In this document: one piece after another, positions 28,439-64,000 of the stretch
Numbering within the stretch: position 1 is the stretch's first letter
How the letters are laid out: each line of letters opens with the position of its first letter
Assembly (NCBI GenBank): GCA_001179505.1
Contig: CDMY01000290.1
Span: 68,389-132,388 of the forward strand
Source of the DNA: Vitrella brassicaformis CCMP3155
Lineage: Eukaryota > Protista > Chromerida
Reading direction: 5' to 3'
Length of the DNA: 64,000 bases
The notes under the pieces: model-generated
The model's input: the letters and a program-made list of their open reading frames with translations, nothing else
What the model was told of the DNA's origin: nothing
Databases searched by the model: none
Made by a program: the position numbers and the translations under genes

Positions 28439-28692
28439 GAGCAGATCTTTCTAGCTCGCCATCGCCAAGCTCGCAGTGAGGATTCGCAGGAATACGACGT
28501 GTTCCGAGTGAATTGAGACTACCATGTCAGCGGCCTCCCTTCATTGAGCCGAGATCTGGCCATTTTGCTGTCCGGTGCTGCACCGTGGTAACCGTCTAAC
28601 GCATCTGCGTCATCGCACGTCATCTCTGCGTCTGACAGCCGCCAGGGAGAGCCCATGAGCAAGCCGACGTGACGGCAGCAGCAGAAGCGACG

Positions 28693-31600
28693 ATGGCGAG
28701 TGAGCAGATCCACCCCCCTGGCGCCTCACCATCAGCAGCCGAGGAGGGCTCTCGGGCTCCAGCTATGCAGGCGGGCGAGGCGGCCGCTCCATCAACAGAA
28801 GCGCGTCAGGGCGGCCATTCATCTGTCCCTGCTCAGCTGGCTCATTCGGGCCCTCAGTGTGGTGCACCAGCCAGTGGTGCAGCGGTGATCCAAACCGATC
28901 TCGGAGCAGGTGACATGGCAGCAATGCAGCCGGCCTCGTCGACTACTAGCCTGTCTGCATTGCTGGCGGCCGTCGTCACCCCCAAGCCCATCCCCGCACA
29001 CCCACACCAACGCTCACACCCACAGGGGCAGCAGGGCGGTCAGACCCCTCCTGCCGGCCATGACCTGCTACTCAATCGCGGTGGCAAGCGGCAGAGGACC
29101 GGTCGGGGCCGCGGCCGGCGGTCGGCGGGAGAGGTAGAGGGTCAGGAAGAGTACACGCCCGAGAACGACTTGGCTGCGGCGCGGCATGAGGCGAGGGGTC
29201 ATGCTGGTAGTCGTGGCGGTGCTGCGGAGGACCACCAGGCCCTCAATCCAGCCACCCACATGTCGCCCGAGGAGGAGGGCAAACACGTGAGTCAGAGGGG
29301 GAGAGAGAGGGAGAGAGAGGGAGAGAGAGTCCCTGCCTACACACACAACAACCCAATCCCGTCTGTATGTGTGTGTAGATCACCGAGTGTTTGAAGGAGT
29401 ATCTGCCCAAGAAGCCCAACGGCAGGCCGGCCCCCCTGGGCCTGCCAATGGTGCAGGGCAAGGGCGTCCGCGTCCAGCTCTACCACCCAAGCGTCGGCGC
29501 CCTCTGGGGACCCACTCGCAACTTCGAGCAGCTCAATTCAGTCAGATCCGGCTTCAAGGCCGCCTGCGAAGACCGCGAACAGGTAGGCACACACATACAT
29601 ACAGACACGTCCCCGTACGCATTCTGACGCCAATGTGAATATGTGTCTGTGTGTGTGGTTGATGGATGTGTGTGTGTATCAGTTTGTGCGTGACATCTGG
29701 GGTCCGAAGGGCGAGGCCCACCAGCTCCACCTGCTGCCCGGCTGGGAGACGGTCGTCGACGACTCACCCCAACCCGCCACCACCCTGGCCATCGCGACCG
29801 ACCGGGCCGAGCAGGTGCCTCAGCAAGGGCCACCGCAGATCACGACAGGCGCCCACTCATACGCACCCCCCGCCCCAGACCCACCGGCACCAGGACCACC
29901 ACGCGACTTCATTACCACGGCCGGCGCGGTGTAGTCATGATCGACGTGCGGCGGATCAATCTGCAGCCACAGCCGACGGACAAGCATGACGCCGACAAAG
30001 GCACGAGTGCTGGTGCGGCCTCCAAGGGTCCGGCACATGACGGCAGGGAGGCGGATGTGTGTGGTGTTGGGGGCGATGACGACATGGATTGGGCTGATGA
30101 CGTGTCTTCGCGTGACGGACAGCCGGGGCACAAGGCCGGCAAGGCTAACACCGTCTGCCGCAAACGTGCCGAGCATCAGTCAGCCGTGCAGGGCGTCCAC
30201 TGGTGTGAGCGGGGTCAGTACTGGCAAGCGAACTGGTACGACAAGGGCGACGGCAAGCAGGAGCGCAAGCGGTTCTCCGTCAAGGAGCATGGCTTCCACA
30301 AAGCGAAGGTACCGACGTCGCATCGCAGCACCCTGCCTCCATCTCACTCTCTGTTTCCCCAAACATATGGATCAGGAGCTGGCTGAGCACCATCGTCTCG
30401 AGATGGAGCGCAACGGCCGGGCAGTTGTGAAGAAGCGTTCGAAGCACCAGAGCGGCGTCAGGGGCGTCAGCTACTCCGAAGGATACAAGAGCTGGGTGGC
30501 CGAATGGCGTAAGGGCGGCAGGAGGAAGACCAAGGCCTTCTCCGTCAAGCAGCTGGGCTACGAGGAGGCCAAACAGGCGGCCATCGCACACAGACGGGAG
30601 ATGGAGCAGCGGCACCACACGTCAGAGGGCGGGGCGACGAGAGATGAGAGCCGTTCCCACAACCCCCCCAATGATGATGATGATGATGAGATTCTTTCGC
30701 CGCGCCGCCACGGCCCCCCCAGCAGCAGGCCAGATTTGGGTGGGATGGAGGGCGGCGACCTGGCTGCTGCGCTCGTTGAGGTCCTCAGCAGCGACGGGTA
30801 AGACAAGACAAGGGAATACAAGGAAGGGCCCGATTTGTCGCGTGTGTACATGTGTGTGGGATGGATTCTTTCGGTCAGGTCATGCGGGTTGTGTTGGCAG
30901 GACGGCGGCTTCCGTGTCCGTCTGCCGTCCTCCGAGGGGGAAGATGGCGAGGACCGCATTGTCGATGTCCCGGTGGTCGACCTCAGCTCCCGTTCGGCCG
31001 TTATCGCCGCTTTTCGCCGCGCCGTCGAGGAGCTCAACCGCCTGAGCACTGCTAGTGAGGGAGGGGCCGCTGCACCCCTGGACATCAGCTGGCTCGATGA
31101 CATCAGCCCCGACGGCTGCGATCGACCTCGGACGCGCCGCCGCAGCGGAGCGAGGCGCGAGCCCATGCCGCCCCCGTCTCTGTCTGAGGGCCCCAGTGAC
31201 CGTCCACTTTACAACGATGACCCCATGGCGCCCCACATTCAGCGCCGGCGCCGCCACAGAGGCAGGTCGTCACCTCGTGTCAGTGAGAGGCCAATAGCCG
31301 ACTCGTCCAGCTCCGAGAACGAGCTGCTCATCGACCGGCCAGCAGCCAAGCGCCATCGTGAGGACTCGGGCGGCGAGAGGGAGCGCTGTGTGTCGGCGAA
31401 GCTGAGTGAGGCGGGCGGCAATTCTCTGGCGGCCAGCCTGGTGGAGCAGGCAAAGCCTCAGCTGGCGGACCTAAACCGAGACGATGCCGACGGGCAGCAA
31501 TGGAGCGCATCGAGACCAGAGGGTTCGACTCGTGGCGGGTCATCCGACCACAACCCCTCTCGCAAGCAGCGCCGCAGACATACGGCTCTCGCCAGCAGGA

Positions 31601-33597
31601 GCCCATCCACCATCGAGGGGCGGATCGGACACCGGAGCGGCGTCAAGAGCGTCAGCTACGACAAGAGACACAACTCATGGGTGGCCCGCTGGAAGGAGGG
31701 GGGCAGCAGGAAGAGCAAGCACTTCATGGTCGAAAGTCTTGGCTTCGAGGGTGCTAAGGAGGCCGCCATCGCACACAGACGACGGAAGACGGAGCGATTG
31801 CACACGTCAGAGGGAGGGGCCAAGAGGCATGGCGACCAAGCTGACTCGAGAAGTGCCGACGATGGCGACGATCCTCTGCCCGTCAAACAGCGACAGGCGC
31901 CTCAGCTGCGTGACGGTGGTGTGGGGGGCGGTGTGCTTCTGCACCCTACGGCTCGCCGTGACACCAACCGACCGCGGCGCCGCAGAGACGACCGATTCGA
32001 GTGCAATCCCTCACCTGCAGACATCGAGGCCCCCAGTTGGCTGCGGGAGGGCCCACCGGCAACGCCGCCGACACACCACACGGCCAGTCGCGGCCCTCGT
32101 GTGTCGCCGGTGCAGAGGGGGCATCTGATTCGCCACTTCTACCAGCAGCTGGAGGCACTCGGCCGAGCCCATCCCGACACGCCCCTCTGTCTGCGGTTCA
32201 GGAGTGGGTCTGCCCTGCCACAGCTGGCCGTCGAGGTGGTCCTGCCCGGCACCCCAGTGCAGTCGGTGCCCCTCTCAGCGGCCACCAGGGAGGCCATGGG
32301 GGCGGCCGTCGATGCCGCATGGGCATGCCGCCAGCAGGAGATGGACATTGACAGTACTGAGGACCAGCAGCCCATGATACACGCCCAGCGGATGGTCCTA
32401 TGCCGTCTGTATGGTCAAGTGGGTCACAACATTGGGGCGATGCTGGCGGCCGTCCCCTCTCTGAGCTTTGCGTCTATCGACTTGTTTGTGCGCCATGGGC
32501 TGCCGGCCATGGTGGGGCAGCGTGACGGCGAGGACCTCAAGGAGGCCGCCAGTCGATTCATCAAACAGCTTCACCACCTCGGTAACCAGCACACCACACC
32601 AGCCATGTCCAAGCGGCTCAAGGCGGCAGATGACGAGCAGCTGCCGAGTGGCCATCACCGGCTGGCCGATATCGACATGACGATGCGGCCACCACTCCAT
32701 CAGCGCGTCAATGACCCGCACCCACCCAATGTGCCGCAGGAACGAGATCCGAATGAGGCCGATCGCATGGCGGATGGGGAGGTGGGCGGTGGGCGGGATG
32801 GTGAGCGCGACGACGGCAATTGCGAGAGGGAGGGCGAGATGATTCCGTTCGATGAGCTGACGAAGGGTCGGTCAGCTGGTGGAGCTGCTCAAGGCCCACC
32901 CATCACCCGACATGCGACACTTAGCCGACAGCATCATGGTCAGCTCACCACAGACACATGTGAAGGCAGACGTGGTAAATGTGCGTGTTGTCTTCTCTTG
33001 TGTGTGTGCAGGGATTGGAGGTCTGTCTGGCGGTGAGTTTGCTGGACATGTTGGATGACATCGACAGTGTGGCGGCGGGTGAGGACATCGGCCGCGACCT
33101 CGGCCTCCACAAGGGCATCGCACTCGTCATCATAGTGCAGCTGCGGCGCTTCCTGCAGTCACTCAAGCGGCGGGGGGCCGTCCAGTGGCCACCTGGGGAT
33201 GGTGTGATGGGTGAGGGAAGCTTGGCTGCCGGTCAGTTGTGGGACTCAGGTCGTCTGGTGTCGGCCGTCGAGCGTTCGATGGGCGTCATGGCGGCCGACA
33301 AGAAGGAGCGGCACGGCGACAAACTGCAACACGTCATCGACAATATCAAAGAGGTCAGCCGGCACACAACACACAGAATACGCACATGACTTCCGTCCGT
33401 GTCTGTCTGTGCTGTGTGTGCAGTATGGCATATCAGGCATGAGCATGTCACTGCTGGTGGAGCCGCCCCAAGACAGCGGTGCGTCTGATGACGGCAGGGT
33501 CGAGGCGGCACTCATCGATGCGGCCCGAGAGACCGTCTTTGGGGGCATATCCGACGTCGCATCTATCCGCCGCACCATCAACCGACAAGACGAATGA
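28693..33597 (+). CDS. Multi-AP2 (ApiAP2-type) gene, copy 1: 3 clear AP2 domains and a SAM-like C-terminus; apparently disrupted by two frameshifts
   Basis: AP2 domains: EHQSAVQGVHWCERGQYWQANWYDKGDGKQERKRFSVKEHGFHKAK/ELAEHHRLEME, KHQSGVRGVSYSEGYKSWVAEWRKGGRRKTKAFSVKQLGYEEAKQAAIAHRREME and HRSGVKSVSYDKRHNSWVARWKEGGSRKSKHFMVESLGFEGAKEAAIAHRR. There is a 1-nt deletion versus copy 3 near 29925 and a 4-nt insertion versus copy 2 near 32868. Confidence 0.8.
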
Positions 33598-33737
33598 GCC
33601 ACCGATCGGCGAGGCTGATGAGCATTTGTGTGGCAAGCAATCGGTGTCCATCGCACTCTACCGGCGTCTATCGCAGTCTATCTGTCAGCGAGACGCGATA
33701 GACGAGACATATAATGTATCGCATCTGTCCACACATG

Positions 33738-33937
33738 CGTTTTTCCGGCCATATGCGAGACATACCCGCACTTTTTTCATCTTTTTTGCTATCGCACACG
33801 GTCGTTCGGATGCAAGCATCACTCGTTCCTAGAGAGGAAATGGTGGGACGGCCATGGCCTGCTGATGATGTTGATGTGAGTCAGTCAGTCAGTCAATGGG
33901 AGAGACTGCCCTTGGTGTGTGCGTGTGTGTCTTTTGG
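33738..33937. repeat. Conserved non-coding element downstream of AP2 copy 1
   Basis: 33738-33837 matches 42921-43020 at 98/100. Similarity resumes after an indel through TGGTGGGACGGCCAT...GAGACTGCCCTTGGTGTGT. Confidence 0.9.
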
Positions 33938-34293
33938 GCCATGCCATGCCATGCCATGCCATGCTATGAGACATTTGCATAGCATGGCATGGCATGGTCA
34001 TCACGCCTGTATGGTCGGTCATTGTGAGACGACGGATGGTCGGTTTGGTGTGCATAGAGAAGGGAGGATGGCGTACGAACGACCTTGACAGCATATATAG
34101 CATCCATGGGACGGGTCACCAAGCTACACACTTCCTTCCCCACAATGCCCCTCTTATCGACCCACCATCAATGCCTCTCCAATCCCCCTGTCCTGTCTGT
34201 CAGTCTGTTGGTCGAGCTACCGCCTCTTGGCCATCAATAGATAGCTAATTAACCTGCAGGTAATGAAAACACACGTGACAAGATGTCTTTTAC

Positions 34294-35741
34294 TCATGTC
34301 CCACCTCGCCCCACATCATCGCCCCCGTGGCCATCTCCCCCGTTGTCCTGGTTGGGGTCCTCACCGTCGAATATGATGGGCGCGATGGGGCCCAGGACGG
34401 GGCGCGCCAGGGCGGTGGTGAGCGGGAAGCGGTGCTTGAAGGGCGCACTCTCAGCCACACCAGGTGCAGGCGTCTCGCTCGTCTTGACGGACACCAACAC
34501 TGCAGACACACACCTCTGTTTTCTCACGTCATGTGTCCCGTCTTCTCTGTCTGGTTTGGAAAGGCCCTCTTCTCATTATGTACCATATTCGTCATCAACG
34601 GTATCGCAAAGTTGTAGCCATGCGATGAATGGCTGGTCGTAGGCCGTCAGCAGCAGCTGCACGTGGTACATATCGGGTGCCTGGTATGCCGTCACTGCCG
34701 TGGTGCCAGCGACCGGCTGATGGGGCGGCCGATCGATGAGGCCAGCCAACACACCACCACGAGCATCGCTGCAACACACCAACATATGAGTGTACCCATG
34801 CATGAATCGGTGTGTCCCTCGTGTCATGCTGACCGGCGGACGCTTCTCCCGACGTCCTTGACCTGTTTGTACGGCAGCAGGGTGTTGATGATGAACCCCG
34901 AGAAAGACGCATTGGTCCAGGGACCATCAGCCGCCGACCAGCCATCGCCACTCAGTCCGATGCGATGACTGACGGGGGGGTTGTGGGGCAGGGCGTTCTG
35001 CTGGATGGGGTTGTTGGCGGGGAGGGGAGGGGTGAGGTCTATCGCATACGCGGCGTCGTCTTCAACGGCACGCAGCCCGCCGCCAGGCTGACCGAACAGC
35101 TCGACTGTGCCGTTCTTGGCGCCCACGTGGCGGCCGACCATCTTCCACTGAGCTATCACACGGGGCTGAGCCATATACGCCTACACGACACAAGGCATAC
35201 ACACACAGAGATGAGTGCCGCCCACCATCCAATCCACGCCATCTGTCTGTTCTGTGTACCTGTTTGCTTTGGTGCTTCTCGAGGTCTTGCTGTGTGATGT
35301 TGACGGGCAGCTCACAGTAGGTGAGCTGACGCGCCAGCCGCAGTGCGTCGGCCACCTCGTCCCAACTCTGATCCTCAACCAAGTACATGGCCTATGTTGA
35401 CACAGTGGAGCATGCCACCCATCCCCCAGGCCATCTGTCTTCCTTCTGTGTACCTGCAGCAGCAGCTGGTCCTCCAGTTGTGCGTCATCGAACGTCAGCA
35501 CAGTGTCCAGCGGCGTCCCGTCGGCAAGTGTCGTGTCGTGCAGGGCGCGGGCGAGCCGTCGGCGCAGCACGTCGGTCTCAAAGTCGACCTGCGATAGGAA
35601 GAGGGCGGTGGATCTGAGGACGCCCAAGTCCTTGAGCTTGTGCAGCCTGTCCCGCTCTTCTCGATGGATGAAGTCCGGCTGCTGGCCGCGGATCGATGGC
35701 CAGTGCTCGTCGTTGCTTCTTCTGCTCACATTACCACCCAT
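34294..35741 (-). CDS. Hypothetical protein with N-terminal MGxxxS myristoylation-type motif, multi-exon
   Basis: Starts MGGNVSRRS. GT-AG introns join ...DQLLLQ/AMYLVEDQSWDEV..., AYMAQPRVIAQWKMVG...ASFSGFIINTLL, DARGGVLAGLID...CDTVDDEYGT and VSAVLVSVKTSE...GRGGT*. Junctions are partly uncertain. Confidence 0.65.
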
Positions 35742-35798: not shown

Positions 35799-36033
35799 CC
35801 GCTAGCTCGCGTTGTGAATCTCTCAGGAATACGGACGTGTCCGAGTGGAATTGTGACTACCATGTCAGCGGCTTGCCTTCCTTCAGCCGAGATCTGGCGA
35901 TTTTGCTGTCCGGTGCTGCACCTGGGTCACCGTCCAACGCCGCATCTGCGTCATCGCACGTCATCTGTGCGTTTGACAGCCGCCAGGGAGAGCCCATGAG
36001 CAAGCCGACGTGACGGCAGCAGCGGAAGCGACA

Positions 36034-39000
36034 ATGGCGAGTGAGCAGATCCATCCCCCTGGCGCCTCACCATCAGCAGCCGAGGAGGGCTCTCGGGCTC
36101 CAGCTATGCAGGCGGGCGAGGCGGCCGCACCATCAACAGAGGCGCATCAGGGCGGCCATTCATCTGTTCCTGCTCAACTGGCTCATTCGGGCCCTCAGTG
36201 TCGTGCATCAGCCAGTGGTGCAGCGGTGATCCAAACCGATCTCGGAGCAGGTGACATGGCAGCAGCACTGGCGGCCTTGTCGACTACTGGTCCATCTGCA
36301 TTGGCCGCCGTCGTCAGCCCCAACCCCATCCCTGCACACCCACAGCCACAGTGGCAGCAGGGTGATCAGACCCCTCCTGCCGGCCATGATCAGACCCCTC
36401 CTGCCGGCCATGACCTGCTGCTCAACCGCGGTGGCAAGCGGCAGAGGACCGGTCGGGGCCGCGGCCGGCGGTCGGCGGGAGAGGTAGAGGGTCAGGAAGA
36501 GTACACGCCCGAGAACGACTTGGCTGCGGCGCGGCATGAGGCGAGGGGTCATGCTGGTAGTCGTGGCGGTGCTGCGGAGGACCACCAGGCCCTCAATCCA
36601 GCCACCCACATGTCGCCCAAGGAGGAGAGCAAACACGTGAGTCAGAGAGAGGGAGAGAGAGACCACCTACATACACACACAACAACCCAATCCCGAGCAC
36701 CCCGTGTGTGTGTAGATCACCGAGTGTTTGAAGGAGTATCTGCCCAAGAAGCCCAGCGGCAGGCCGGCACCCCTGGGCCTGCAGATGGTGCACAACAAGG
36801 GCGTCCGCGCCCAGCTCAACCACCCAGGCGTCGGCAAGATCCGGGGACCCACTCGCAACTTCGAGCAGTTCCAGTCAGTCCGATCCGCCTTCAAGGCCGC
36901 CTGCGAAGACCGCGAACAGGTAAGCATAAACATACACACGCACACATCCCCCCATTTCCCACGCCAATGTGATTTTCTGGTGGCTGTGTGTGTGCATCCA
37001 TCAGCTTGTGCGTGACATCTGGGGTCCGAAGGGCAAGGCCCACCAGTTCCAGTTGCTGCCCGGCTGGGAGACTGTCGTCGATGACTCACACCAACCCGCC
37101 ACCATCGAAAGCGACCGGGCCAAGCCGGTGCCTCAGCATGGGCCACCGCAGATCACGACAGGCGCCGCCGCCCCACAGACTCACCACCCAGACCCACCAG
37201 CACCGGGACCACCACACGGCAGCACACTGTCACGCGAGGGGACTCCGCCACCTGCCGGCAACAGGCAGCAGACGTCGAGCCGCCAACCGGAGCTTCTTCT
37301 GGGAGCGCTGCGCAAGAAGCGGAACAAGCACCAGCCCGAGTACGAGGGTTTTGAGTTCAGTGTGGCCGACGAGGGCGACGGAAAACGGTTTATGGTGACG
37401 GCCTGGCGGGGGGAGGGGGGAGGGACCGACCGGCCGCCGGTGTGCGTGCGGGCTGACGTCACTCGTGACCACATAGGGAGGGGGTGGGACATGAGCATGC
37501 TGAGCGACCTGCTGATGGCCGTCCACAACGGCACGGCAGACAGTGACGATCGCTTTGAGAGTGTGTCTGATGTCATCGATGGCCTCGAGCGGACCGTCAC
37601 ACAGTGGAAACAACCTGCTGCAGGTAAGAGACTGGAGAGGGGAAACAAGGGAGGCTGGGGGACTTTGATGCACATCATTGTGTGCGTGCTGCTGTCTTTT
37701 CGTATGTGCAGGGTTGATTGGCGTCCCTCCCCCTGTCAATGATTCACCGCCCGCCGGTGCCCCCGGTCCCTCGTCCATGACCCTCGCTGCTCCTGCTGCT
37801 GGTGGCGGTGGGTCAGCCGACCCACCTCACGATGAGCGACCCGACGACAAAGGTAGGTACCTGCAGGTGACAACCATATCAGCCGAATCGTCGATCGACA
37901 CACATTCATTCATCGTGTCCGCCCTGCGTTGCCTTCTCAGGTCTCATATCAGCCAGGAAGCCCGCCAACCAACGTGGTGGCCGCAGGCCCCGCTCCTCTG
38001 CGAGGGCGGGGGAGGAAGTGCAGCAGGGAGGCCACGGGCGTGACGAGTCCGTCGACCGCAGCCCGTCGCTGAGGCATCGCCACACACACCCTCTCGGCAG
38101 CTGCGCCCCAGCCCACGAGGAAGCACCGATGCCCGACGCCAGCGAGGGCAGCTACCAGTCAGACGTCCGTGGCGTCTTCTGGGCGAAAAAGGACAAAGCG
38201 TGGAGGGCGACTTGGTGCGAGAGGGGGGACGCCAAGAACAAGCATTTCTACGTCAAGGAGCACGGCTTCGACAAAGCAAAGGTACTAAAGACAAGAAGCA
38301 CGGCGACAAAGCTAAGGGGCAAGAGACAAGAAAGAGCACAGCCCGCACACGTGATGGTGATGCTCCTGGCTTCCTTCAGGCTTTGGCCGAGCAGCATCGT
38401 CGTGAGATGGAGCGCAGCGGCCGGGCAGCAGTCAAACAGACATGCAAGCATCAGAGCGGCGTGCGGGGCGTCAACTTCGACGAGAGAAACAAGCGCTGGG
38501 TGGCCATTTGGCAGGTGGGGGGCAGGAGGAAGAGCAAGTGCTTCCCCGTCAAGCAGCTTGGCTACGAGGAGGCCAAACACGCCGCCATCAACTACCTCCG
38601 GGCCATCTTGGAGAGGCAGTCCAACACGCCCGAGCGAGCGGCGGTGCTGGATGGCGACCCGGCTGACGCGAGAAGTGCCGACGATGGCGACGATTCTCTG
38701 CCCGTCAAACAGCGACGGGCGCCTCAGCTGCGTCAGGGTGGTCTGAGGGGCGCTGCTCCTGTGGATCCCATTGCTCGCCCTGACACCAAGCGCCAGGACC
38801 GAAGAGACGGCCGACCCAACCGCAAGCCCTCGCCTGACATCGAGAGCCACGGTGGGCTGCGGGAGGGCCCCCCTGGTCATCTGCAGGAACATCGCACGGC
38901 CACTCATGTGACGCCACTCCAGCGGCAGCGGCATCATAAGTCAAAAGCCGACACCCCGGGAGATGAGAGCCTTTCCCGCAGTCCCCCCAATGATGATGGT

Positions 39001-42000
39001 GCGATTCACTCGCCGTGCCGCCACGGGCCCCCCAGCTGCGGGCCAGGTGTGGGTGTGATGGAGGGCGGCGACCTGGCCGCTGCCCTCGTCGAGGTCCTCA
39101 GCAGCGACGGGTAGGGAAAGACAAGGGAAGACAAGAAAGGGCCAGATTTGTCACGTGTGTGCATGTGTGTGTGGGATGGTTTCTTTCGCGCAGGTCATGC
39201 GAGCTGTGTTGGCAGGACGGCAGCTTCCGTGTCCGTCTGCCGTCCTCCGAGGGGGAAGATGGCGAGGACCGCATTCTCGATGTCCCGGTGGTCGACCTCA
39301 GCTCCCGTTCGGCCGTCATCGCTGCTTTTCGCCGCGCTGTCGAGGAGCTCAACCGTCTGAGCACTGTCAGTACGGGAGAGGCCGCTGCACCCCTGGACAT
39401 CAGCTGGCTCGATGACATCAGCCCCCACGGCCCCATTCGTCCTCGGACGCGCCACCGCAGCAGCAGAGCCAGGCCCAAGCCCATGCCGCCCCCGTCTCTA
39501 TCTGAGTGCCCCAGTGGCCATCCACTCGACAACAATGACCTCATGCCGCCCCACATTCAGCCTCGCCGCTGCCACAGAGGCAGGTCGTCATCTCGTGTCA
39601 GTGAGAGGCTGAGAACGGACTCGTCCAGCTCCGAGAACGAGCTGCTCATCAACCGGCCAGCAGCCAAGCGCCATCGTGAGGACTCGGGCGGCGAGAGGGA
39701 GCGCTGTGTGTCGGCGAAGCTGAGTGAGGCGGGCGGCAATTCTCTGGCGGCCAGCCTGGTGGAGCAGGCAAAGCCTCAGCTGGCGGACCTAAACCGAGAC
39801 GATGCCGACGGGCAGCAATGGAATGCATCGAGACCAGAGGGGTCGATTCGTGATCAGTCATCCGACCACAGCCCCCCTCGAAAGCACCGCCGCGCTCTCG
39901 CCAGCAGAAGCCCATCCACTATCGGAGCGGCGGAACACCGGAGCGGCGTCAAGAGCGTCAGATACGACAAGAGATACAACTCATGGGTGGCCCGCTGGAA
40001 GGAGGGGGGCAGGAGGAAGAGCAAGTCCTTCTCCGTCAAGTAGCTTGGGTTCGAGGAGGCCAAAAAGGCCGCCATCGCACACAGACGGAAGATGGAGCGA
40101 TTGCACACGTCAGAGGGAGGGGCCAAGAGGCATGGCGACCCGGCTGACTCGAGAGGTGCCGACGATGGCGACGATCCTCTGCCCGTCAGACAGCGACGGG
40201 CGCCTCAGCTGCGTGACGGTGGTGTGGGGGGGCGTGTGCCTCTGCACCCTACGGCTCGCCGTGACACCAACCGACCGCGGCCCCGCAGAGACGGCCGATT
40301 TGACCGCAATCCCACGCCGGCCCCCAGTTGGCTGCGGGAGGGCCCCCCTGGTGGGCTGCAGGAGCATTGCACGGCCACTCGTGTGTCGCCGGTGCAGAGG
40401 GGGCATCTGATTCTCCACTTCTACCAGCAGCTGGAGGCACTCGGCCGAGCCCATCCCGATACGCCTCTGTGTCTACGGTTCAGGAGTGGGTGTGCCCTGA
40501 CCCAGCTGGCCGTCGAGGTGGTCCTGCCCGGCACCCCAGTGCAGTCGGTGCCCCTCTCAGCGGCCACCAGGGAGGCCATGGGGGCGGCCATCGATGCCGC
40601 TTGGGCATGCCGCCAGCAGGAGATGGACATTGACGGCACTGAGGACCAGCAGCCCATGACACACGCCCAGCGGATTGTCCTCTGTCGCCTGTACAGTCAA
40701 GTGGGTCACAACATTGGGGCGATGCTGGCGGCCGTCCCTTCTCTGAGCTTTGCGTCCGTCGACTCATTTGTGCGCCGTGAGCTGCCGGCCATGGTTGGGC
40801 GGCGTGACGGCGAGGACATCAAGGAGGCCGCCAGTCGATTCATCAGACAGCTTCAGAAGACCAATCAGCAGAACACCAGGCTGGGCTACGAGGCTGCTAT
40901 GGCTGCCGCCACCCCTCACAAACGGGCCGTGATGGAGCAGAAACCATGTGAGCATCAGAGCGGCGTGCGGGGCGTGTATTTCGACAAGGCACACAACGCA
41001 TGGATTGCCAACTGGTCGGAGGGCGGCACGAAGAAGACCAAGGACTTCTCCGTCAAAGAGCTCGGCTACGAGCCTGCCAAACAGGCCGCGATCGCGCACC
41101 GCCGTGCGATGGAGGAGAGGCACTCGACCCTCTTCGGCAGCGACAGGCAAGAGGGCGGCCAGTGTGATAAGTCTGTCAATCGCAGTCCGTCTCTGAAACA
41201 CCGCTGCAGAGACCCATCCGCCAGCAGCAGCGCATCCGCCGTCGAGAGGCGACAGAGACCCAAGGGCAGCAAGACAGCCGAGGCCACCAAGGGCAAGACG
41301 GCCGCCATCCGCAGACGTGCCGAGCATCAGTCAAAGGTCGTGGGCGTCTCCTGGGATGGGAAATTCCGGGCGTGGACGGCGTCATGGTATCCGAAGGACG
41401 GCACCAGGCAGAAGAAAAAGCACTTCAAAGTCGGAGAGCACGGCTTCGACAAAGCAAAGGTATGCAAGACCTACATGGCCTGAAGCAAAGGTGCTTATGG
41501 ACCAGTCGTTTTCCTTCTCTCTCTCTCTCTCTCTCTCTCTCTTCGCCTCAGGCGTTGGCTGAGCAGCATCGTCTCGAGATGGAGCGCACCGGCCAGGCAG
41601 TGGACAGGGGGCGAGTCAAGCGCCAGAAGGGCCACCGGCTGGCATCAGCCATATTCGAGCGGCTCAAGGCGGCAGATGACGAGCAGCTGCCGAGTGGCAA
41701 TGAGCCGCTCGATATCGACGTGACGCCGCAGCGCATGAGTCGAGACGCGGCCGATGTGGTCCCGCAGACGCAGTCCCCCTCGCCAGCCAATGGCCCGCAC
41801 ACACCTGATGTGACGCCCGATGCACGAGATCCGGCCGCTGCCCGTCGCATGGTGGATGGGGCGACGCACGGAGGACGGGATGCTGGGCATGGCGACGGCA
41901 ATGGCGAGAGGGAGAGCGGGATGATTCCGTTCGATGAGCTGACGAAGGTTCAGCTGGTGGAGCTGCTCAAGGCCCACCCATCACCCGACATGCGACAGGT

Positions 42001-42539
42001 TGCCGAGAACATCATGGTCAGCACACCACACTCATTTGTGAAGGCAGACGTCATAAATGTATGTGGCCAACTGTGTGTGTGTGCGTGTGTGTGTTTCAGT
42101 TGGTTGAGAAGTACGCGCCTCAGCAGCTGTTCACTGGTGGCGGCCACACTTTATCTGAGCCCTCGCACGCCCCGCCGCCCCCCGCCCCCAACACCGCCAA
42201 AGACCACGACTACAGCCCCCCCATCAACACTGACAAGCCCACCACCAAGGTCAGTGTGTGCCCAGTCACACAGGCGACAGCCAACGGTGCCCTTTGTGAT
42301 GGCATTGATTGCAGGTGACGCTGCGGCTGCACACGGGGGAGCAGGTGAAGCTGACCTTCAACAGCGCCATGGCCGTCAAGGAGCTGTACGCGGCGGCCTC
42401 CAAGGCGAGCAACATCGGTGTGGCCAGCTTCCGGCTCTTCTCGTCGGCGGCTTTCCCTCCCAAGCCGCTGGACGACCAGGCGCAGTCGCTTGAGGAGGCG
42501 GGGGTGATGGAGTGCCTCGTCACGCAGAAGCTCACATGA
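36034..42539 (+). CDS. Multi-AP2 (ApiAP2-type) gene, copy 2: 5 AP2 domains and a C-terminal SHP box plus UBX domain; in-frame TAG at 40041
   Basis: AP2 domains near 38150, 38445, 39935, 40950 and 41325. The last exons read LVEKYAPQQLFTGGGHTLSEP (SHP box) and VTLRLHTGEQVKLTFNSAMAVKELY...FRLFSSAAFPPKPLDDQAQSLEEAGVMECLVTQKLT* (UBX). The TAG interrupts KSFSVK*LGFEEAK. Confidence 0.82.
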
Positions 42540-42920
42540 ATGAATGACAGACAGACGGGGAGATGATTCATTCGTGCAGGCGAGGGAGGTGAGGCTGCTG
42601 TTTTGTGTGTCTGAGGTTTGAGAGGGGATGCATGGAGTAAGGTGTGTGTGTCGGTTGACTGACGATGGGGCCTCATAACATAACATACGCACTGACTGAG
42701 GTGTGTCGATGGAGCTGGGTGCGGTGCGGTGCGGTGCGGTGCGTTGCGTTGCGTTGCCTTTATGTATGTGCTTACTCGTGGTGTCGGCTGGCCTGGCCGG
42801 GATCTTGGATCGGTCTGTCGGTGTGGTGCCTTACCTGAATGCCTTTTTGAAGTAAAGACCATTGATAGATACCAGGTTGGTGATGCTTTGGATTGCATGC
42901 ATTCGTCAGTGCCTCACATT

Positions 42921-43153
42921 CGTTTTTCTGGCCATATGCGAGACATACCCGCACTTTTTTCATCTTTTTAGCTATCGCACACGGTCGTTCGGATGCAAGC
43001 ATCACTCGTTCCTAGAGAGGTCTTGTCTGCATCGTCGAGTCGATGTGTCGTGTTTTGAGTGGTGGGACGGCCATCGCATGCTGATGATGTTGATGTGAGT
43101 CAGTAAGTCAATGGTACAGTAGAGACTGCCCTTGGTGTGTGTGTGTCTTTTGG
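42921..43153. repeat. Conserved non-coding element downstream of AP2 copy 2
   Basis: Second copy of the 33738-33937 element, with a roughly 40-bp extra segment after CTAGAGAGG. Confidence 0.9.
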
Positions 43154-49386: not shown

Positions 49387-49431
49387 CGCCAGGCTTCCTT
49401 TTGCGAGCTTTTAGACTGGGGGCCTGGCCAT

Positions 49432-53437: not shown

Positions 53438-53486
53438 AACCTGACTCTGTGGATGTTAGAATGAATGAGCGGATCGTCTCTCCCTC

Positions 53487-53517
<31 letters not shown>

Positions 53518-58042: not shown

Positions 58043-58366
58043 CGCTGCGGCTGCAAAGAGGCGCAAAGATCTGCAGATCTGCACACCTTCCTCTTTTTTT
58101 CCGAGCTCGCAGAAGATTCCTTCCGGGGCGGGATTGAGGCGCTTTACGACCTCGCCAGCGGCATAATGTCTTCCTCTTCCGCAGATCTCCTACAATTGAA
58201 CAAAGATCTGGCGGTTTTGCTGTCTGCCGCTTCATGGAGTGGAAGTCAGACACCGCATCTACCGTTATCTGTGCCCCTGACGGCGCCAAGGGAGGGGCCC
58301 ATGAGCAAGCTGAAGCGACGGCAGCAGCAAAAGTGACGGCTGAATCGTCCAGCCGCAGCGACGTGA

Positions 58367-61300
58367 ATGGTGCCGTCGATTTATGACGCCGACAGGTCTA
58401 CGCCTGGTGAGGACGGCTCTCGGGCGGCGCCAGCAATGCAAGCGTCCTTGGCGATTCCTGGTCCGCCTTTAAACGCCGCACCAGCCATGAGGACGAGTCA
58501 GCACAACAATCCGTCTCTTCATTCCACTGACGTGCCCCTCCCATACTTAGACGGCACCGCAGCACAGCAGCGAGAAACGGGCTCTCGACCGTTTCCTGAT
58601 GCGGCGTCGGCAAGCCAGTCGCGGCAGAATGGTGCGACAGCGGCTGTCCGAGACGATGAGGGCCAGTCAGCCTTTCCTCTGACGATAGGCGAGCAGACGC
58701 ACCCACCCCCCCTTCCAGACCTCGTCCCCCCCTTACCACCGCCACCCGCACACCGGCCGGCAGCACCACTACAGGACATCACCACCTCAGCAGGACATCA
58801 CACACCGCCCCGTGGTCGCAAGAGGAAGCACGAGGGCGGCTCATCAGCCCGACAGGGCACTCCAGCACTTGCCCACCACAGGGAGGGGACCTCAGGCACC
58901 TCGGTGGGCCGACCCAGACCGATCCACCTGCTGAAGGTGCTGGACAAGATGCGGACGCCCGACGACCGCGATTTTCTGCCCGAATACGAGGGTTTTGCGT
59001 TCAGAGTGGCCGACGAGGGGGACGGAAAACGCTTTATGGTGACGGCCTGGCGAGGGGAGGGGGGAGGGACCGACCGGCCGCCGGTGTGGGTGCAGGCGGT
59101 TGTCACTCGTGACCACATAGGGAGGGGGTGGGACATGAGCATGCTGAGCGACCTGCTGGTGGCCGTCCACAACGGCACGGCAGACAGTGACGAGCGCTTT
59201 GAGAGTGTGTCTGACGCAATCGATGGCCTCGAGCGGACCGTCACACAGTGGAAATCTGCTGCAGGTAAGGATGGAGAGGGGGAACAAGGGAGGCTGGGGG
59301 ACTTACGTGTATCGTTGGGGGGGGGGTCTTTTCATGTGTGCAGGACTGAGTAGTGTCCCTCCCCGTGTCAATGATTCACCGCCCGTCGGTGCCCCCGGTC
59401 CCTCGTCCGTGACCCTCGCTGCTGCTGCTGGTGCTGCTGCTGGTGGTGGTGGTGGCTCAGCTGACCCACCTCACAATGAGCCTCCCGATGACAAAGGTAG
59501 ACAGCCACACCATTCCTACCGTCGAGCACCCATCCATTGTGGGCGCCTGTGTTGTTTTCGCTTAGGTTTGTGGGCCAAGAAGGCCAAGAAGGAGCCGCGG
59601 AAGCGCAAGGGCGGCAAGACAGCCGAGGTCGGCAAGGGCAGGACCGTTATCCGCAAACGTGGAGAGCACCGGTCCGACGTGCCGGGGGTTTACTGGTCTG
59701 AGCAGTACCAGTATTGGGCGGCATCTTGGTACGACAAGGGTGACGGCAAGCAGAAGCACAAGTTCTTCTACATGAAACATCACGGATTCGACAAAGCAAA
59801 GGTGGGAATAAGCCGAGGGGCGCCGTCCACCTTGTTTTTTCTCTCCCTTGGCTTCAGGCGTTGGCCGAGCAGCATCGTCGTGAGATGGAGCACACAGGGC
59901 AGGCAGCGGTCAGGGGGCGATTGGAACATCAGAGCGGCGTCAAGGGTGTCCACTACCACGAGGTAAACAACTCATGGAAGGCCAGCTGGCAGGTGGGGGG
60001 CAGGAGGAAGACCAAGTCCTTCTCCGTCAAGGAGCTTGGCTTCGAGGAGGCCAAAGACGCCGCCATTGCACACAGACAGAAGATGGAGCGAGTGCACACG
60101 TCAAAGGGCGGGGCGGAGAGGCATGGCGACCCGGCTGACTGGAGAAGTGCCGACGATGGCGACGATTCTCTGCCCGGCAGGCAGCGACGGGCCCCTCAGC
60201 TGCGTGACGGTGGTGTGGGGGGCGGTGTGCCTCTGCACCCTACGGCTCGCCGTGACACCAACCGACCGCGGCCCCGCAGAGGCGGCCGATTCGACCGCAA
60301 TCCCTCGCCGGACATCGAGGCCCCCAGTTGGCTGCGGGAGGGCCCGGCTACGCCGCCGACGGGCCACACGGCCAGTCGCGGCCCTCGTGTGTCGCCGGTG
60401 CAGAGGGGGCATCTGATTCTCCACTTCTACCAGCAGCTGGAGGCACTCGGCCGAGCCCATCCCGACACGCCTCTGTGCCTGCGGTTCAGGAGTGGGTCTG
60501 CCCTGCCACAGCTGGCCATCGAGGTGGTCCTGCCCGGCACCCCTGTGCAGTCGGTGCCCCTCTCAGCGGCCACCAGGGAGGCCATGGGGGCGGCCATCGA
60601 TGCCGCATGGGCATGCCGCCAGCAGGAGATGGACATGGACGGCACTGAGGACCAGCAGCCCATGACACACGCCCAGCGGATGGTCCTGTGCCGTGTGTTT
60701 GGTCAAGTGGGTCACAACATTGGGGCGATGCTGGCGGCCGTCCCAGCTCTGAGTTTTGCGTCCGTCGACTCGTTTGTGCGCCGTGAGCTGCCGGCCATGG
60801 TGGGGCGGCGTGACGGCGAGGACATCAAGGAGGCCGCCAGTCGATTCATCAAACAGCTTCAGAAGACCCATCGGCAGCATACCAGGCTGGGCTACGAGGC
60901 TGCTATGGATGCCGCCAACAGGCACAAACGGGCCTTGATGGAGCAGCGACACTCCACGTTCGAGAGAGGGGCGCCTCCGTCGAGCGGCAGCGACAGCAGT
61001 GGCTCACGTGAGAGCCGCAATGGCAGCCAGCGAAACAAGCAGCGGCGGATGGACGAGGAGGATGGCGGCCTCTCGCCTGCGCCTGACCGTTACGATCTGG
61101 GCGGGCTGACGGGCGACGCGTTATGTCGTGGCCTGATGCGGCGGTTGCGTCAGAAGCAGCCAAATGTCCACTCCCTCTGCCTCAACAACGGAGGGTAAGC
61201 GAGGGAGGACGACTCTCAGCGACAATGAACGGCCGGATGTCATGAGGGACTCGTCTCTGGATATGTGTGGCGTGTGTCAGTGTCGGCGTCACGTGGCGGG

Positions 61301-64000
61301 CGAGCTACGTCTTCGAGGCCTACTTCTGGGACAGCCAGGCTGCAGCCGCTGTGGATCTTCGTCAGTTCGGTGTTGGTGAGGACGTCACCTCCCGTGAGGC
61401 CATCTTCACGGCCTTCCGCCAAGCCGTCGAGTATCGCAACGCCCTGCATAGCTCGCGTCTGGGCGACCAGGCGGTGCTCATCGACCTCTCGTGGCTCGCC
61501 CTGGTCGCTAGACGACAGGGCGTGAGCCGCTCACCTGTCGAGCGACACGGCGGGGGAGCGAGTCATGGGTCCATGCCGCCACCGCTACTGCTTGACGACC
61601 GCGACATCCTTCCACTCGAGGAGCGTGGCCTCATGCCGCCCCGCATTGAGCCCACGGGCCGCAGAGGCAGGCCATTACATGGTCGTGATGGCCGGGGGGT
61701 GGGCGACTTGGCTGGTTTTGAAGGCGAGGAGGCCAGTCATCGGCCAGGGACCAAGCGCCGTCGCGATATGTCGGGAGGCAAGGGAAGGCAGTTTATGTCG
61801 CCCAGGCTGGGTGAGGCGGACGGCCATGCTCTGGCAGCCAGCCTGGTGGAGCAGACAAGACGGCAGCTGGCAGACGTAAACCAAGACGATGCCGACAGGT
61901 GGGCAGAACGATGGAGTCTCATGGAATGGGCCACGCATTTTCCTCTTCCTTGGTGTGTGCTTCACTCAGTTTCGGTCTCGAATGGCGCGGCGAGGAGGGT
62001 AGCTTTGTGGCTTACCGACCAGACGGCGGAGAGGGGCCCGAGCAGCGTGTCTTCAGTGTGTCTGACGTGACCTCACCCCGGCTCATCCTGCGTGCCTTCG
62101 CCCAAGCGGCGCACCACCTCAACGCCACGGCTGGCAACGGTGCAATCGTGGTCGACGTGTGGCGCATCAATCTGCAGCCACAGCCGACGGACAAGCATGC
62201 TGTCGACAAAGGCACGAGTAGTGGTATGGCTTCCATGGGTCCGACGCATCATGACGGTGGCGAGGCAGATGTGTGTGATGTTGGTGGCGATGACGACATG
62301 GATTGGGCTGATGACGTGTCGTCGCCCGACGAACAGCCGAGGCGCAGGGCCACCCCGGGCAAGGCGAAGACCTTCGTTCAGAGGGCCCAGCATCACTCAG
62401 ACGTGACAGGCGTCTACTGGTCTGAGAAGTACCAGTCTTGGGTGGCAACTTGGTACGACAAGGGCGACGGCAAGCAGAGGGAGAAGCACTTCTACGTCAA
62501 ATATCACGGATTCGACGAAGCCAAGGTACCGGCATCGCATCGCAGCACCGCACCTCCATCTCACTCTCTGTTTCCCCAAACGTATGGATCAGGAGCTGGC
62601 TGAGCACCATCGTCTCGAGATGGAGCGCAGCGGCCAGGCAGTAGTCAGGAGGAGAGCCAAGCATCAGAGCGGCATCAAGGGCGTCACCTTCGACGAGAGA
62701 TACAAGCGCTGGAAGGCCAGCTGGCGGGTGGGGGGCAAAGCGAAGAGCAAGTACTTCTCCGTCGCTGAGCTTGGCTTCGAGGGTGCCAAGCAGGCAGCGA
62801 TAGCACACAGCCGTGCTATGGAGGAGAGGCACTACCCTCGTCCGGGCAGCGGCAGCCAGCCCGTCCACCAGCCTTCTCCTCACCACTCTGCCGCCGGCCA
62901 CGGTCGAGCGGAGGCTTCCCACTCTGCCGCCGGCCACGGTCGAGCGGAGGCTTCCCGCCCTCAGCCGTCGCCCCCCGCTGCACAGGAGAATGACATCGAT
63001 ATGCGGGGCGGCAGCATGGCGTCATCTCGGCACTTGGGTCAAAGGTCTGATGTCCAACCGAGCTCTTCACCCCATCGGCGCGTTCCCCCGACCCTCTCTC
63101 CAGTCGGACGTCGCGGCCCCAAGCCACGGTCAAGTGAGGCCAGCCGCGGTGCCGACATGGCTTCACCGTCTGAGTCGGAGTGGCAGGGCTATGTAACATC
63201 ATCACTGTCGTCTGGTGGTGAGGGGCGTGACAGCGACTACCGCGATAGCAGCAGCTCGAGCCCGCCGCGCCGCCTTCTCCCCAAGTCCACCAGTCGTCAC
63301 AGCGGCAGGCGAGGGCGCAGGAGGGTGAACACCGACGACATTGAGGAAGCGGGGAGTGCTTCGGATGATTCGGTGCGGTGCTGGGAGTGCGGCAAGGGCG
63401 ACGATGAGCAGCTTCTGCTATTGTGTGACAACGGGGGCTGCTCTGCGGCGTACCACACCTACTGCGTCCAGCTGACGGCCGTCCCCAAGGGCAAGTGGTT
63501 CTGCCCCGAATGCACGCACAGCAAAAGGACCGGCACTCGTGGCAACCGGGCGCTCGAGCGACGGCAAGAGGGCGGCCACTGCGACGAGTCTGTCAATCGC
63601 AGTCCGTCTCTGAAGCACCGCCGCAGAGACCCATCCGCCAGCAGCAGCCCATCTACCGTCGAGAGGCGACAGAGACGAAAGGCCGGCAATGCAGCCGAGG
63701 CCACCAAGGGCAAGACGGCCGCCATCCGCAAAGGTGCCGAGCATCAGTCAACGGTCGTGGGCGTCTCCTGGGATGCGAGGGCCCGGGCGTGGAGGTCGAC
63801 ATGGTATGCGAAGGATGACACCACGCAGAAGAAAAAGCTCTTCACAGTCCGAGAGCACGGCTTCGACAAAGCAAAGGTGCGCGAGACCTACACGGCCTTA
63901 AGCAAAGGTGCTTATGGACCATTCGCTTCCCTTCTCTCTCCCTTGCCTTCAGGCGTTGGCCGAGCAGCATCGTCGTGAGATGGAGCGCACAGGGCAGGCC
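58367..64000 (+). CDS. Multi-AP2 (ApiAP2-type) gene, copy 3: at least 5 AP2 domains plus a PHD finger; 3' end beyond right edge
   Basis: AP2 domains near 59665, 59925, 62390, 62660 and 63740. PHD finger CWECGKGDDEQLLLLCDNGGCSAAYHTYCVQLTAVPKGKWFCPEC at 63379-63513. No stop or frameshift was seen in the visible part. Confidence 0.88.

What the first reader, a model, noticed from the sequence alone, without database searches (positions are those of the whole stretch)
28451..64000. A modular multi-AP2 gene family with shuffled modules and swapped effector domains
Three paralogues (28693-33597, 36034-42539, 58367 to beyond 64000) share a 5' leader and draw on one set of blocks in different orders and numbers. 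The blocks are an intron-split AP2 (always spliced at GFxKAK|xLAE), an intronless AP2, degenerate AP2-like units and two unknown globular domains. They carry 3, 5 and at least 5 clear AP2 domains, whereas described ApiAP2 factors usually have 1-4. Each has a different effector: SAM-like, SHP+UBX or PHD. This looks like an actively recombining transcription-factor construction kit that couples DNA binding to polymerisation, p97 extraction or histone reading. No transposase, RT, HNH or helicase is visible.
Basis: partly seen in the sequence, partly recalled or inferred. Interest (0 to 1): 0.85.

Follow-up and report, generated by a model that had tools for sequence, protein, structure and literature searches.

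The report
Recombining multi-AP2 gene cluster in Vitrella
Three neighbouring genes of the alga Vitrella brassicaformis are young, recombining copies from a known species-specific expansion of AP2 DNA-binding proteins, but two carry reading-frame breaks, and only the SHP+UBX tail is a real swap, a piece copied from another gene.

Summary
The window is the last 64 kb of Vitrella brassicaformis scaffold CDMY01000290.1.

**Observation: confirmed.**
- The three loci share DNA blocks at 70-90% identity.
- They carry 3, 5 and at least 5 Pfam-grade AP2 domains.
- Every split AP2 (6 of 6 here, 6 of 6 at a sister locus) has a phase-0 intron at KAK|ALAE.
- PHD, UBX and an SHP box are real.

**Interpretation: partly supported.**
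- Recombination is real. Conflicting informative sites cluster along a 1-kb shared block (neighbour-similarity test, p<5e-5).
- The SHP+UBX tail is an 850-bp inverted copy of the 3' end of a thioredoxin-SHP-UBX gene. It is joined in frame through a phase-0 intron, and a second locus on the same scaffold has the same join.

**Against three intact genes with swapped effectors:**
- Gene 1 has two frameshifts.
- Gene 2 has an in-frame TAG inside an AP2. The annotation splits both genes.
- The second fusion copy has its own premature stop.
- Gene 3 is cut by the scaffold end, and paralogues carry the PHD internally together with the usual C-terminal tail.
- "SAM-like" was not confirmed.
- No transcript evidence was obtained.

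Woo et al. 2015 already reported a cluster of 50 homologous apiAP2 genes in Vitrella. First-stage notes of this scan had also flagged the second fusion copy, elsewhere on this scaffold.

The parts
28468..29905 (+). 5' block of gene 1 (upstream region, leader coding region, degenerate AP2-like unit at 29457-29712) shared with gene 2
   Evidence: 85.7% identical to 35804-37218; module hit degL
28693..29934 (+). Gene 1 leader reading frame; annotated separately as a 275-aa gene (28915-29934); ends at TAG 29932-29934
29925..29926 (+). 1-nt gap relative to gene 3. The leader is in frame 1 and the AP2 part in frame 0, so the leader is not joined to the AP2 array
30084..33597 (+). Annotated gene 1 (P0001, 1042 aa); introns 30309-30375, 30798-30878, 32782-32875, 32939-33011, 33354-33423
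   Evidence: exact spliced mapping of P0001
30171..30429 (+). Gene 1 split AP2 (phase-0 intron 30309-30375)
   Evidence: Pfam AP2
30442..30609 (+). Gene 1 intronless AP2 no. 1
   Evidence: Pfam AP2 55.4 bits
30879..31056 (+). Gene 1 degenerate AP2-like unit (P0001 residues 216-275)
   Evidence: family HMM, i-E 3.7e-21; hhalign against AP2, P 3e-4, probability 39%
31630..31797 (+). Gene 1 intronless AP2 no. 2
   Evidence: Pfam AP2 48.5 bits
32101..32571 (+). Gene 1 D1 domain (found only in Vitrella proteins so far)
32866..32869 (+). 4-nt insertion (GGTC duplicated) at the start of tail domain T1, absent from three paralogues; the annotation hides it in an ad hoc intron
32842..33561 (+).
   Evidence: fold not confirmed
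35804..37218 (+). 5' block of gene 2, shared with gene 1
36034..40043 (+). Annotated gene 2a (1162 aa), ends at the in-frame TAG
37338..37610 (+). Gene 2 D2 domain
   Evidence: 91% to gene 3 D2
38153..38433 (+). Gene 2 split AP2 (intron 38282-38379)
38446..38616 (+). Gene 2 intronless AP2
   Evidence: Pfam 50.7 bits
39933..40100 (+). Gene 2 AP2 interrupted by TAG at 40041-40043 (gene 3 has GAG, gene 1 AGT)
   Evidence: no alternative letter in DNA-run contigs X2 and X3
40092..42539 (+). Annotated gene 2b (735 aa): exons 40092-41459, 41552-42016, 42100-42249, 42315-42539. These give 735 codons and a 240-nt intron sum, matching the annotation
40383..40859 (+). Gene 2 D1 domain
40950..41114 (+). 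Gene 2 intronless AP2
   Evidence: Pfam
41322..41599 (+). Gene 2 split AP2 (intron 41460-41551)
41924..42016 (+). First third of tail domain T1; the rest is replaced
42066..42915 (+). Inverted copy of the 3' end of a thioredoxin-SHP-UBX gene: part of an intron, the SHP exon, an intron, the UBX exon and the 3' flank
   Evidence: 89% to L002 14617-13781; breakpoints read
42100..42249 (+). SHP-box exon (motif FTGGGHTL)
   Evidence: 50 of 50 residues identical to the parent gene
42315..42539 (+). UBX exon with stop codon
   Evidence: Pfam UBX 23.5 bits, cut-off 21
42912..43153 (+). 3' flank homologous to the gene 1 flank 33729-33937; marks the right edge of the replaced segment
58367..64000 (+). 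Gene 3 (P0005, 1727 aa as annotated): uninterrupted frame, introns 59265-59343, 59497-59565, 59802-59857, 61195-61280, 61899-61969, 62526-62592; cut by the scaffold end
   Evidence: exact spliced mapping
58982..59254 (+). Gene 3 D2 domain
59664..60091 (+). Gene 3 AP2 pair no. 1 (split AP2 59664-59911, intronless AP2 59924-60091)
60389..60865 (+). Gene 3 D1 domain
61282..62126 (+). Gene 3 degenerate AP2-like units A (61282-61446) and B (61971-62126) with a low-complexity linker
62388..62823 (+). Gene 3 AP2 pair no. 2 (split AP2 62388-62646, intronless AP2 62659-62823)
63373..63516 (+). PHD finger (Cys4-His-Cys3), in the same exon as the flanking AP2 domains
   Evidence: Pfam PHD 31.2 bits, cut-off 24
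63630..64000 (+). Last 371 bp, holding split AP2 no. 3 (63739-64000, intron 63877-63952). 100% identical to the first 371 bp after a 300-N gap in scaffold CDMY01000269.1

Best explanation
This is a cluster of young duplicates (synonymous divergence about 0.1-0.2) from the Vitrella-specific multi-AP2 family. Shown: the proteins follow one plan. It has an N-terminal leader with or without D2, then repeats of an adjacent AP2 pair (a split AP2 with a fixed phase-0 intron, then an intronless AP2) mixed with very divergent AP2-like units, and normally a D1 domain plus two helical tail domains at the C-terminus. Shown: the copies differ through segmental duplication, deletions and short gene-conversion or crossover tracts between repeated modules. 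Shown: in one lineage about 720 bp of the tail was replaced by an 850-bp inverted copy of the 3' end of a thioredoxin-SHP-UBX gene. The left breakpoint lies in a phase-0 intron next to (TG)n tracts, so the SHP and UBX exons are in frame. That chimera was then duplicated with its locus. Shown: in the assembly, gene 3 is intact as far as the scaffold goes, while gene 1 (two frameshifts) and gene 2 (one nonsense codon, truncated tail) are interrupted. Inferred: the intact members are multi-site DNA-binding regulators whose AP2 DNA-contact surfaces diversify while D1 and the tail stay constrained. Inferred: genes 1 and 2 are either decaying copies or genes recently split into shorter ones. The cluster is a gene-family birth-and-death process, not three finished factors with chosen effectors.
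For: Organism and scaffold. Shared blocks. Module maps of the window, L002 and L003. Fixed intron in 12 of 12 split AP2 domains. Recombination: 74 informative sites in five copies, conflicting splits clustered (g1+g2 at columns 4-97, g2+L2c at 465-485, g1+L2c at 984-1008), neighbour similarity 0.753 against 0.417 in permutations, p<5e-5. Origin and breakpoints of the UBX tail. Second colinear copy, 90.5% over 3.4 kb. Lesions. The annotation splits the genes at those points. Gene 3 intact. dN/dS is 0.16-0.73 for D1 and 0.66-1.73 for the AP2 before it. Variation sits in the first two-thirds of the AP2 domain, while the framework residues and the C-terminal third are kept in 22 copies. PHD is internal and followed by the normal tail in P0006, and by AP2-D1 in the L003 array. 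Published expansion by duplication: PMC4501334.
Against: No transcript evidence: the two possible RNA runs gave only short pieces at 95-99% identity, which fit paralogues. The lesions rest on one short-read assembly that has gaps inside sister arrays, so some may be consensus errors. AP2 dN/dS near 1 rests on small counts and fits relaxed constraint as well as diversification. The SHP and UBX exons are better conserved than the adjacent intron and 3' flank (96.5-97.1% against 83-92%, no indels). That fits a tail still under selection, but a further flank is 98.3% identical, so divergence is patchy.
Confidence: 0.7

Rival explanations
1. One reading: three intact, expressed transcription-factor genes that each couple an AP2 array to a different effector (SAM polymerisation, p97 recruitment by SHP+UBX, histone reading by PHD).
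For: All the domains except SAM are real. The SHP-UBX join is in frame and the public annotation predicts it. UBX keeps the Arg and FP signature, and the SHP motif fits F-x-G-x-G-x-x-L. The fusion exons are better conserved than the adjacent intron and 3' flank.
Against: Gene 1 has two frameshifts and gene 2 a TAG. The second fusion copy has its own premature stop before the tail. PHD is internal in paralogues that keep the usual tail. SAM is unconfirmed. There is no transcript evidence.
Confidence: 0.1
2. Assembly artefact: the different module orders, the lesions and the chimeric tail come mainly from mis-assembly of a repetitive family in a short-read assembly.
For: Gene 3 ends at the scaffold end. 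Its last 371 bp are 100% identical to the first bases after a 300-N gap in another scaffold. The L003 array has three N gaps. DNA-run contigs show alternative joins between modules.
Against: Paralogous blocks differ by 10-30%, enough for unique assembly. The chimeric tail is present at two loci that are colinear over 3.4 kb yet 9.5% diverged.
Confidence: 0.1
3. Functional gene fission: the stops and frameshifts are real, but the pieces are separate working genes, as annotated. That would give a leader-only protein, an AP2 protein without a leader, and a D1-AP2-AP2-SHP-UBX protein starting at 40092.
For: The annotation calls them so. AP2-less D1-tail genes exist in the family (P0004, P0007). 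D1 of genes 1 and 2 has dN/dS of 0.16-0.6 against other copies.
Against: There is no evidence for internal promoters or separate transcripts. The abutting gene calls (24-50 bp apart) look like products of the annotation pipeline. Sister arrays show similar lesions inside domains.
Confidence: 0.2

Closest known systems
ApiAP2 / AP2-ERF DNA-binding proteins of Myzozoa, in particular the Vitrella 'cluster of 50 homologous apiAP2 genes' of Woo et al. 2015 (PMC4501334)
   Same: Pfam AP2 domains above the curated cut-off; a lineage-specific expansion by gene duplication; annotated as AP2/ERF domain-containing proteins of V. brassicaformis CCMP3155.
   Different: The paper gives counts only. It does not describe the adjacent AP2 pair with a fixed intron, the D1, D2 and tail domains, the mosaic recombination, the reading-frame lesions, or the PHD and SHP-UBX additions. 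Each gene here has 3 to at least 5 AP2 domains. Whether these three genes belong to that cluster of 50 was not checked by gene identifier.
SHP-box plus UBX cofactors of Cdc48/p97 (p47/NSFL1C/Shp1 type)
   Same: An SHP-type motif is followed by a UBX domain with the conserved Arg and FP loop. The C-terminal half of the UBX resembles that of p47.
   Different: No UBA or SEP domain is present. The parent gene is a thioredoxin-SHP-UBX gene, not p47. Only its last two coding exons were copied. Binding to Cdc48 is untested.
Exon shuffling through recombination in same-phase introns, giving young chimeric genes
   Same: The left breakpoint lies about 7 nt into a phase-0 intron. The acceptor and the following exons come from another gene's phase-0 intron, which preserves the frame, and a ready 3' flank came along.
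   Different: The donor fragment is inverted relative to its arrangement at the sister locus. Both known copies carry upstream stop codons, so the chimera may be dead.
PHD fingers (NSD-type by best Pfam match)
   Same: Cys4-His-Cys3 spacing is intact and the Pfam score is above the cut-off.
   Different: It is embedded between AP2 domains. Its histone ligand cannot be told from sequence.

Membership tests
AP2 (PF00847) DNA-binding domain | Profile match above Pfam's gathering score (33.3 bits) | tested here: met
   55.4, 48.5, 50.7, 73.8 (two domains), 52.4 and 59.3 (two domains) bits. Split copies score 27.6-37.2 bits on their first exon alone.
AP2 (PF00847) DNA-binding domain | Sequence-specific DNA binding | not testable with these tools
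   Needs protein-binding microarray, DAP-seq or EMSA.
Degenerate units as AP2-fold members | Detectable homology to the AP2 profile in the right register (three strands, then a helix) | tested here: inconclusive
   hhalign of 17 units against 22 AP2 domains: 48 columns aligned in register, P 3.2e-4, probability 39%. There is no Pfam hit.
UBX domain (PF00789) | Profile match above the gathering score (21 bits), plus the conserved Arg in strand 1 and the FP loop | tested here: met
   23.5 bits for 42315-42536. The motifs RLH...FPPK are visible in the translation.
SHP box | Motif F-x-G-x-G-x-x-L upstream of the UBX domain | tested here: met
   FTGGGHTL in exon 42100-42249, identical in the parent gene.
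p47/NSFL1C/Shp1 family | UBA and SEP domains N-terminal to SHP-UBX | tested here: not met
   No SEP or UBA hit in any frame scanned. The parent gene carries thioredoxin instead.
PHD finger (PF00628) | Profile match above 24 bits and the Cys4-His-Cys3 pattern | tested here: met
   31.2 bits, residues 266-310 of ORF 62584-63978.
SAM domain (PF00536 / PF07647) | Profile match, or a confident five-helix SAM fold | tested here: inconclusive
   No Pfam hit at E up to 10. No SAM hit in PDB profile searches. AlphaFold pLDDT was 43 and 39, with five helices predicted but not trustworthy. Language-model similarity to SAM clusters was 0.76-0.85, below the 0.9 lead threshold.
Myb/SANT (for the C-terminal half of D1) | Profile match above 24.4 bits | tested here: not met
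   Only the divergent paralogue P0008 gives E 0.0016, below the cut-off. The window's copies give nothing. No PDB match.

The most novel reading that the evidence does not exclude
The frame starting at 40092 (or all of gene 2, if the TAG is an error or is read through) makes a protein that joins D1 and two or more sequence-specific AP2 domains to an SHP box and a UBX domain. That would be a Cdc48/p97 adaptor aimed at particular DNA sites, born recently by exon shuffling and kept at two loci.
Probability: 0.15. Interest if true: 0.75.

Novelty: new variant of a known kind. Interest (0 to 1): 0.45.

Why it matters
Chromerids are the free-living reference point for how AP2 regulators multiplied before the parasites arose. 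This cluster shows the process at base-pair resolution. There is a duplicating two-AP2 cassette, gene-conversion tracts, and breakpoints of a domain capture that can be read to within a few bases. Copies also stand in different states of integrity. The pattern warns that counts of AP2 genes and of their 'architectures' in this genome are inflated or distorted by split, broken and gap-spanning gene models. If the AP2-SHP-UBX chimera is expressed, it would be a natural DNA-targeted p97 adaptor.

Tried and rejected
1. RNA evidence. Two runs behave as DNA. The two guessed RNA runs gave fragments at 95-99% identity that fit paralogues, so splicing and expression of gene 2 could not be judged.
2. 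Brute-force enumeration of GT-AG gene models from annotated lengths gave many solutions and was not relied on. Exact mapping of P0001 and P0005, plus homology, was used instead. The 735-aa model of gene 2b was recovered only through its matching intron sum.
3. AlphaFold of D1 plus tail (P0004) and of the tail alone failed, with pLDDT 43 and 39 on alignments of 9 and 6 rows. No fold search was run on these models.
4. PDB profile searches for T1, T2 and the D1 C-terminal half gave only chance-level hits.
5. I first read the high conservation of the SHP and UBX exons as purifying selection. I withdrew most of that weight after finding a neighbouring flank at 98.3% identity and a dN/dS of 0.51 between the two fusion copies.
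6. A mobile-element explanation was considered. No transposase, reverse transcriptase or endonuclease domain was found in the large ORFs between the genes.
7. The annotated proteins of genes 2a and 2b were not returned by either homology search.

Full report
**Identity and setting**

The largest ORF of gene 1 matches, at 100%, an annotated protein of Vitrella brassicaformis CCMP3155 (P0001, 'AP2/ERF domain-containing protein'). Its contig is CDMY01000290.1 (132,388 bp). From the fetched coordinates, window base 1 is record base 68389 and window base 64000 is the last base of the scaffold. GC content is about 60% and the genes have short GT-AG introns of 55-98 nt.

The public annotation calls these genes:
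- 28915-29934 (275 aa)
- 30084-33597 (1042 aa, AP2)
- 34249-35741 on the minus strand
- 36034-40043 (1162 aa, AP2)
- 40092-42539 (735 aa, AP2 plus a faint UBX)
- 58367-63978 (P0005, 1727 aa)

**Observation**

Self-BLASTN confirms that the three loci share blocks at 70-90% identity in different combinations.

Pfam finds 3, 5 and 5 AP2 domains. Module searches place them, and the other recurring pieces, in order. In these maps S is a split AP2, I an intronless AP2 and d a degenerate AP2-like unit.
- Gene 1: leader, d, [frame break], S, I, d, low-complexity linker, I, D1, T1, T2.
- Gene 2: leader, d, D2, S, I, d, linker, I (with TAG), D1, I, S, first third of T1, SHP, UBX.
- Gene 3: N-terminus, D2, S, I, D1, d, linker, d, S, I, PHD, S, then the scaffold end.

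S and I are two distinct subtypes that always sit about 8 residues apart as a pair. This also holds in the divergent family member P0008.

All 12 split copies examined (6 in the window, 6 in locus L002) have the intron in phase 0 between ...AK and (A/E)LAE.

PHD (31.2 bits) and UBX (23.5 bits) pass Pfam's cut-offs. The exon before UBX carries FTGGGHTL, an SHP-type motif.

The degenerate units form a real repeat family, with 18 copies in six proteins. They align to the AP2 profile in register, but only weakly (P 3e-4, probability 39%).

D1 was found in only nine of 1.84 billion representative proteins, six of them strongly. Those whose source is on record are Vitrella proteins.

**Reading-frame lesions**

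1. Gene 1, leader junction. The leader is in frame 1 and runs into TAG at 29932-29934. The AP2 part is in frame 0. The alignment with gene 3 shows a 1-nt gap after 29925.
2. Gene 1, tail. A 4-nt insertion (GGTC duplicated, 32866-32869) sits at the start of T1 and is absent from three paralogues. The annotated model removes it with a 94-nt 'intron' that also deletes the conserved start of T1.
3. Gene 2. An in-frame TAG lies at 40041-40043 inside an AP2, where gene 3 has GAG. This is exactly where the annotation splits the gene. Contigs of two DNA-like runs cover the place without an alternative letter, but they may derive from the sample that was assembled.
4. Gene 3 has an uninterrupted frame over 5.6 kb.
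5. Sister arrays show similar damage: a nonsense codon and a frameshift in L002, and a nonsense codon in L003.

**Origin of the SHP+UBX tail**

Window 42066-42915 is an inverted copy (89%) of L002 13781-14617. That segment is the 3' end of a gene for a thioredoxin, SHP box and UBX protein. At the L002 locus this gene lies tail to tail with an AP2 gene.

To the left, gene 2 matches paralogues up to about 7 nt into the intron that follows the first third of T1. To the right (from 42912) it matches the 3' flank of gene 1. So about 720 bp, holding the rest of T1, T2 and the stop codon, were replaced.

Both introns involved are phase 0 and rich in (TG)n. The right junction shares a few bases of microhomology.

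With the donor after ...NIM (an 83-nt intron), the exon set 40092-41459, 41552-42016, 42100-42249, 42315-42539 gives exactly 735 codons and a 240-nt intron sum. That matches the annotated model.

The same chimera exists about 40 kb away on the same scaffold, in inverted orientation. It is locus L003, colinear over 3.4 kb at 90.5% identity. There an in-frame stop lies just before T1, and the annotation calls a separate 180-aa UBX gene.

The SHP and UBX exons are 96.5-97.1% identical between copies with no indels. The intron is 86-88% identical and the 3' flank about 92% with many gaps. A further flank is 98.3% identical, and dN/dS between the two chimeric copies is 0.51 (8 non-synonymous to 5 synonymous changes). 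Constraint on the tail is therefore possible but not shown.

**PHD and the end of gene 3**

The last 371 bp of the window are 100% identical to the first 371 bp after a 300-N gap in scaffold CDMY01000269.1. There the sequence continues as I, D1, T1, T2.

The paralogue P0006 carries the PHD internally and ends with D1-T1-T2. In the L003 array the PHD is followed by S, I and D1.

The PHD is therefore an internal addition, not a replacement of the tail. Gene 3's true C-terminus is unknown. I put the odds at about even that it is the D1-T1-T2 tail. The annotated protein P0003 spans the scaffold gap and is probably a composite.

**'SAM-like' and the unknown domains**

T1 and T2 are conserved helical segments. 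They give no Pfam hit at E up to 10, no SAM hit in PDB profile searches, and failed AlphaFold models. Several SAM clusters appear among language-model neighbours at 0.76-0.85, which is only a lead.

The C-terminal half of D1 gives a sub-threshold Myb hit only in P0008. D2 has no match.

**Recombination and rates**

I aligned the colinear block (AP2, linker, D1; about 1 kb) from five copies. The 74 informative sites support conflicting groupings that are spatially clustered. The neighbour-similarity score is 0.753 against 0.417 in 20,000 permutations. This supports gene conversion or crossover tracts of tens of bases.

Synonymous divergence is about 0.1-0.2. dN/dS is 0.16-0.73 for D1, 0.31-1.64 for the linker and 0.66-1.73 for the AP2. 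AP2 variation sits in the first two-thirds of the domain. From established AP2 structures, these are the strand positions that face DNA. The framework residues and the C-terminal third, the helix region, are kept in all 22 copies aligned. This fits diversification of binding specificity, but the counts are small and relaxed constraint is not excluded.

**Comparison with what is known**

Woo et al. 2015 (PMC4501334) report many paralogous apiAP2 genes in chromerids and 'one cluster of 50 homologous apiAP2 genes' in Vitrella, attributed to gene duplication. I found no paper describing the architectures seen here or an AP2-UBX combination.

Other notes of this scan describe AP2 arrays with up to ten divergent units in this genome. 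They also flag the second SHP-UBX copy, as a first-reader note only.

**Verdict**

The three loci, however, are not three finished genes with alternative effectors.

The one true swap is a well-resolved exon-shuffling event whose product may be dead.

This is a new variant within a known expansion, of moderate interest. It would be of higher interest if the AP2-SHP-UBX protein proves to be made.

Noticed in passing
L003 (CDMY01000290.1 record 18379-42501, reversed), 12503-15773 and 18364-20655: A second copy of the D1-AP2-AP2-T1(part)-SHP-UBX arrangement (90.5% to window 40199-43535) and of a DHHC gene (90.3% to window 51678-53948). Together they show a large inverted segmental duplication on the same scaffold. 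This copy has an in-frame stop just before T1.
   Followed up: partly
L002 10493-10792 (CDMY01000269.1): A 300-N scaffold gap lies inside an AP2 array. The annotated protein P0003 (863 aa) is spliced across the gap and is probably a composite of two genes.
   Followed up: partly
L002 14146-15185 (minus strand): The parent gene encodes thioredoxin, an SHP box and UBX (223 aa as annotated). Its model seems to read through part of an intron. This would be an unusual Cdc48 cofactor in its own right.
   Followed up: partly
L002 15940-17485 and L003 15695-17721: Family members without any AP2 domain (P0007 of 362 aa, P0004 of 515 aa) consist only of D1 plus the T1-T2 tail. Each sits just downstream of an SHP-UBX segment.
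   Followed up: no
L002 about 8015 and about 9960: A sister array is cut into three abutting gene calls (1849, 572 and 863 aa) by an in-frame stop in a linker and a frameshift inside an AP2.
   Followed up: partly
window 57314-58084 (minus strand): A glycosyltransferase family 2 gene, resembling dolichol-phosphate mannosyltransferase, lies head to head with gene 3 (Pfam 113.6 bits).
   Followed up: no
protein P0016 (another Vitrella contig): An AP2 protein that also carries a CENPB/Tc5-type HTH domain (PF03221), another AP2 fusion in this genome.
   Followed up: no
window 5401-5835: A direct repeat of about 160 bp (5401-5682 against 5560-5835, 95% identity).
   Followed up: no
window 43535-51678: About 8 kb between the two duplicated segments has no counterpart in L003, where the D1-tail gene P0004 and an N gap lie instead. 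The ORFs here gave no Pfam hit except a weak LRR at 49144-49773.
   Followed up: no
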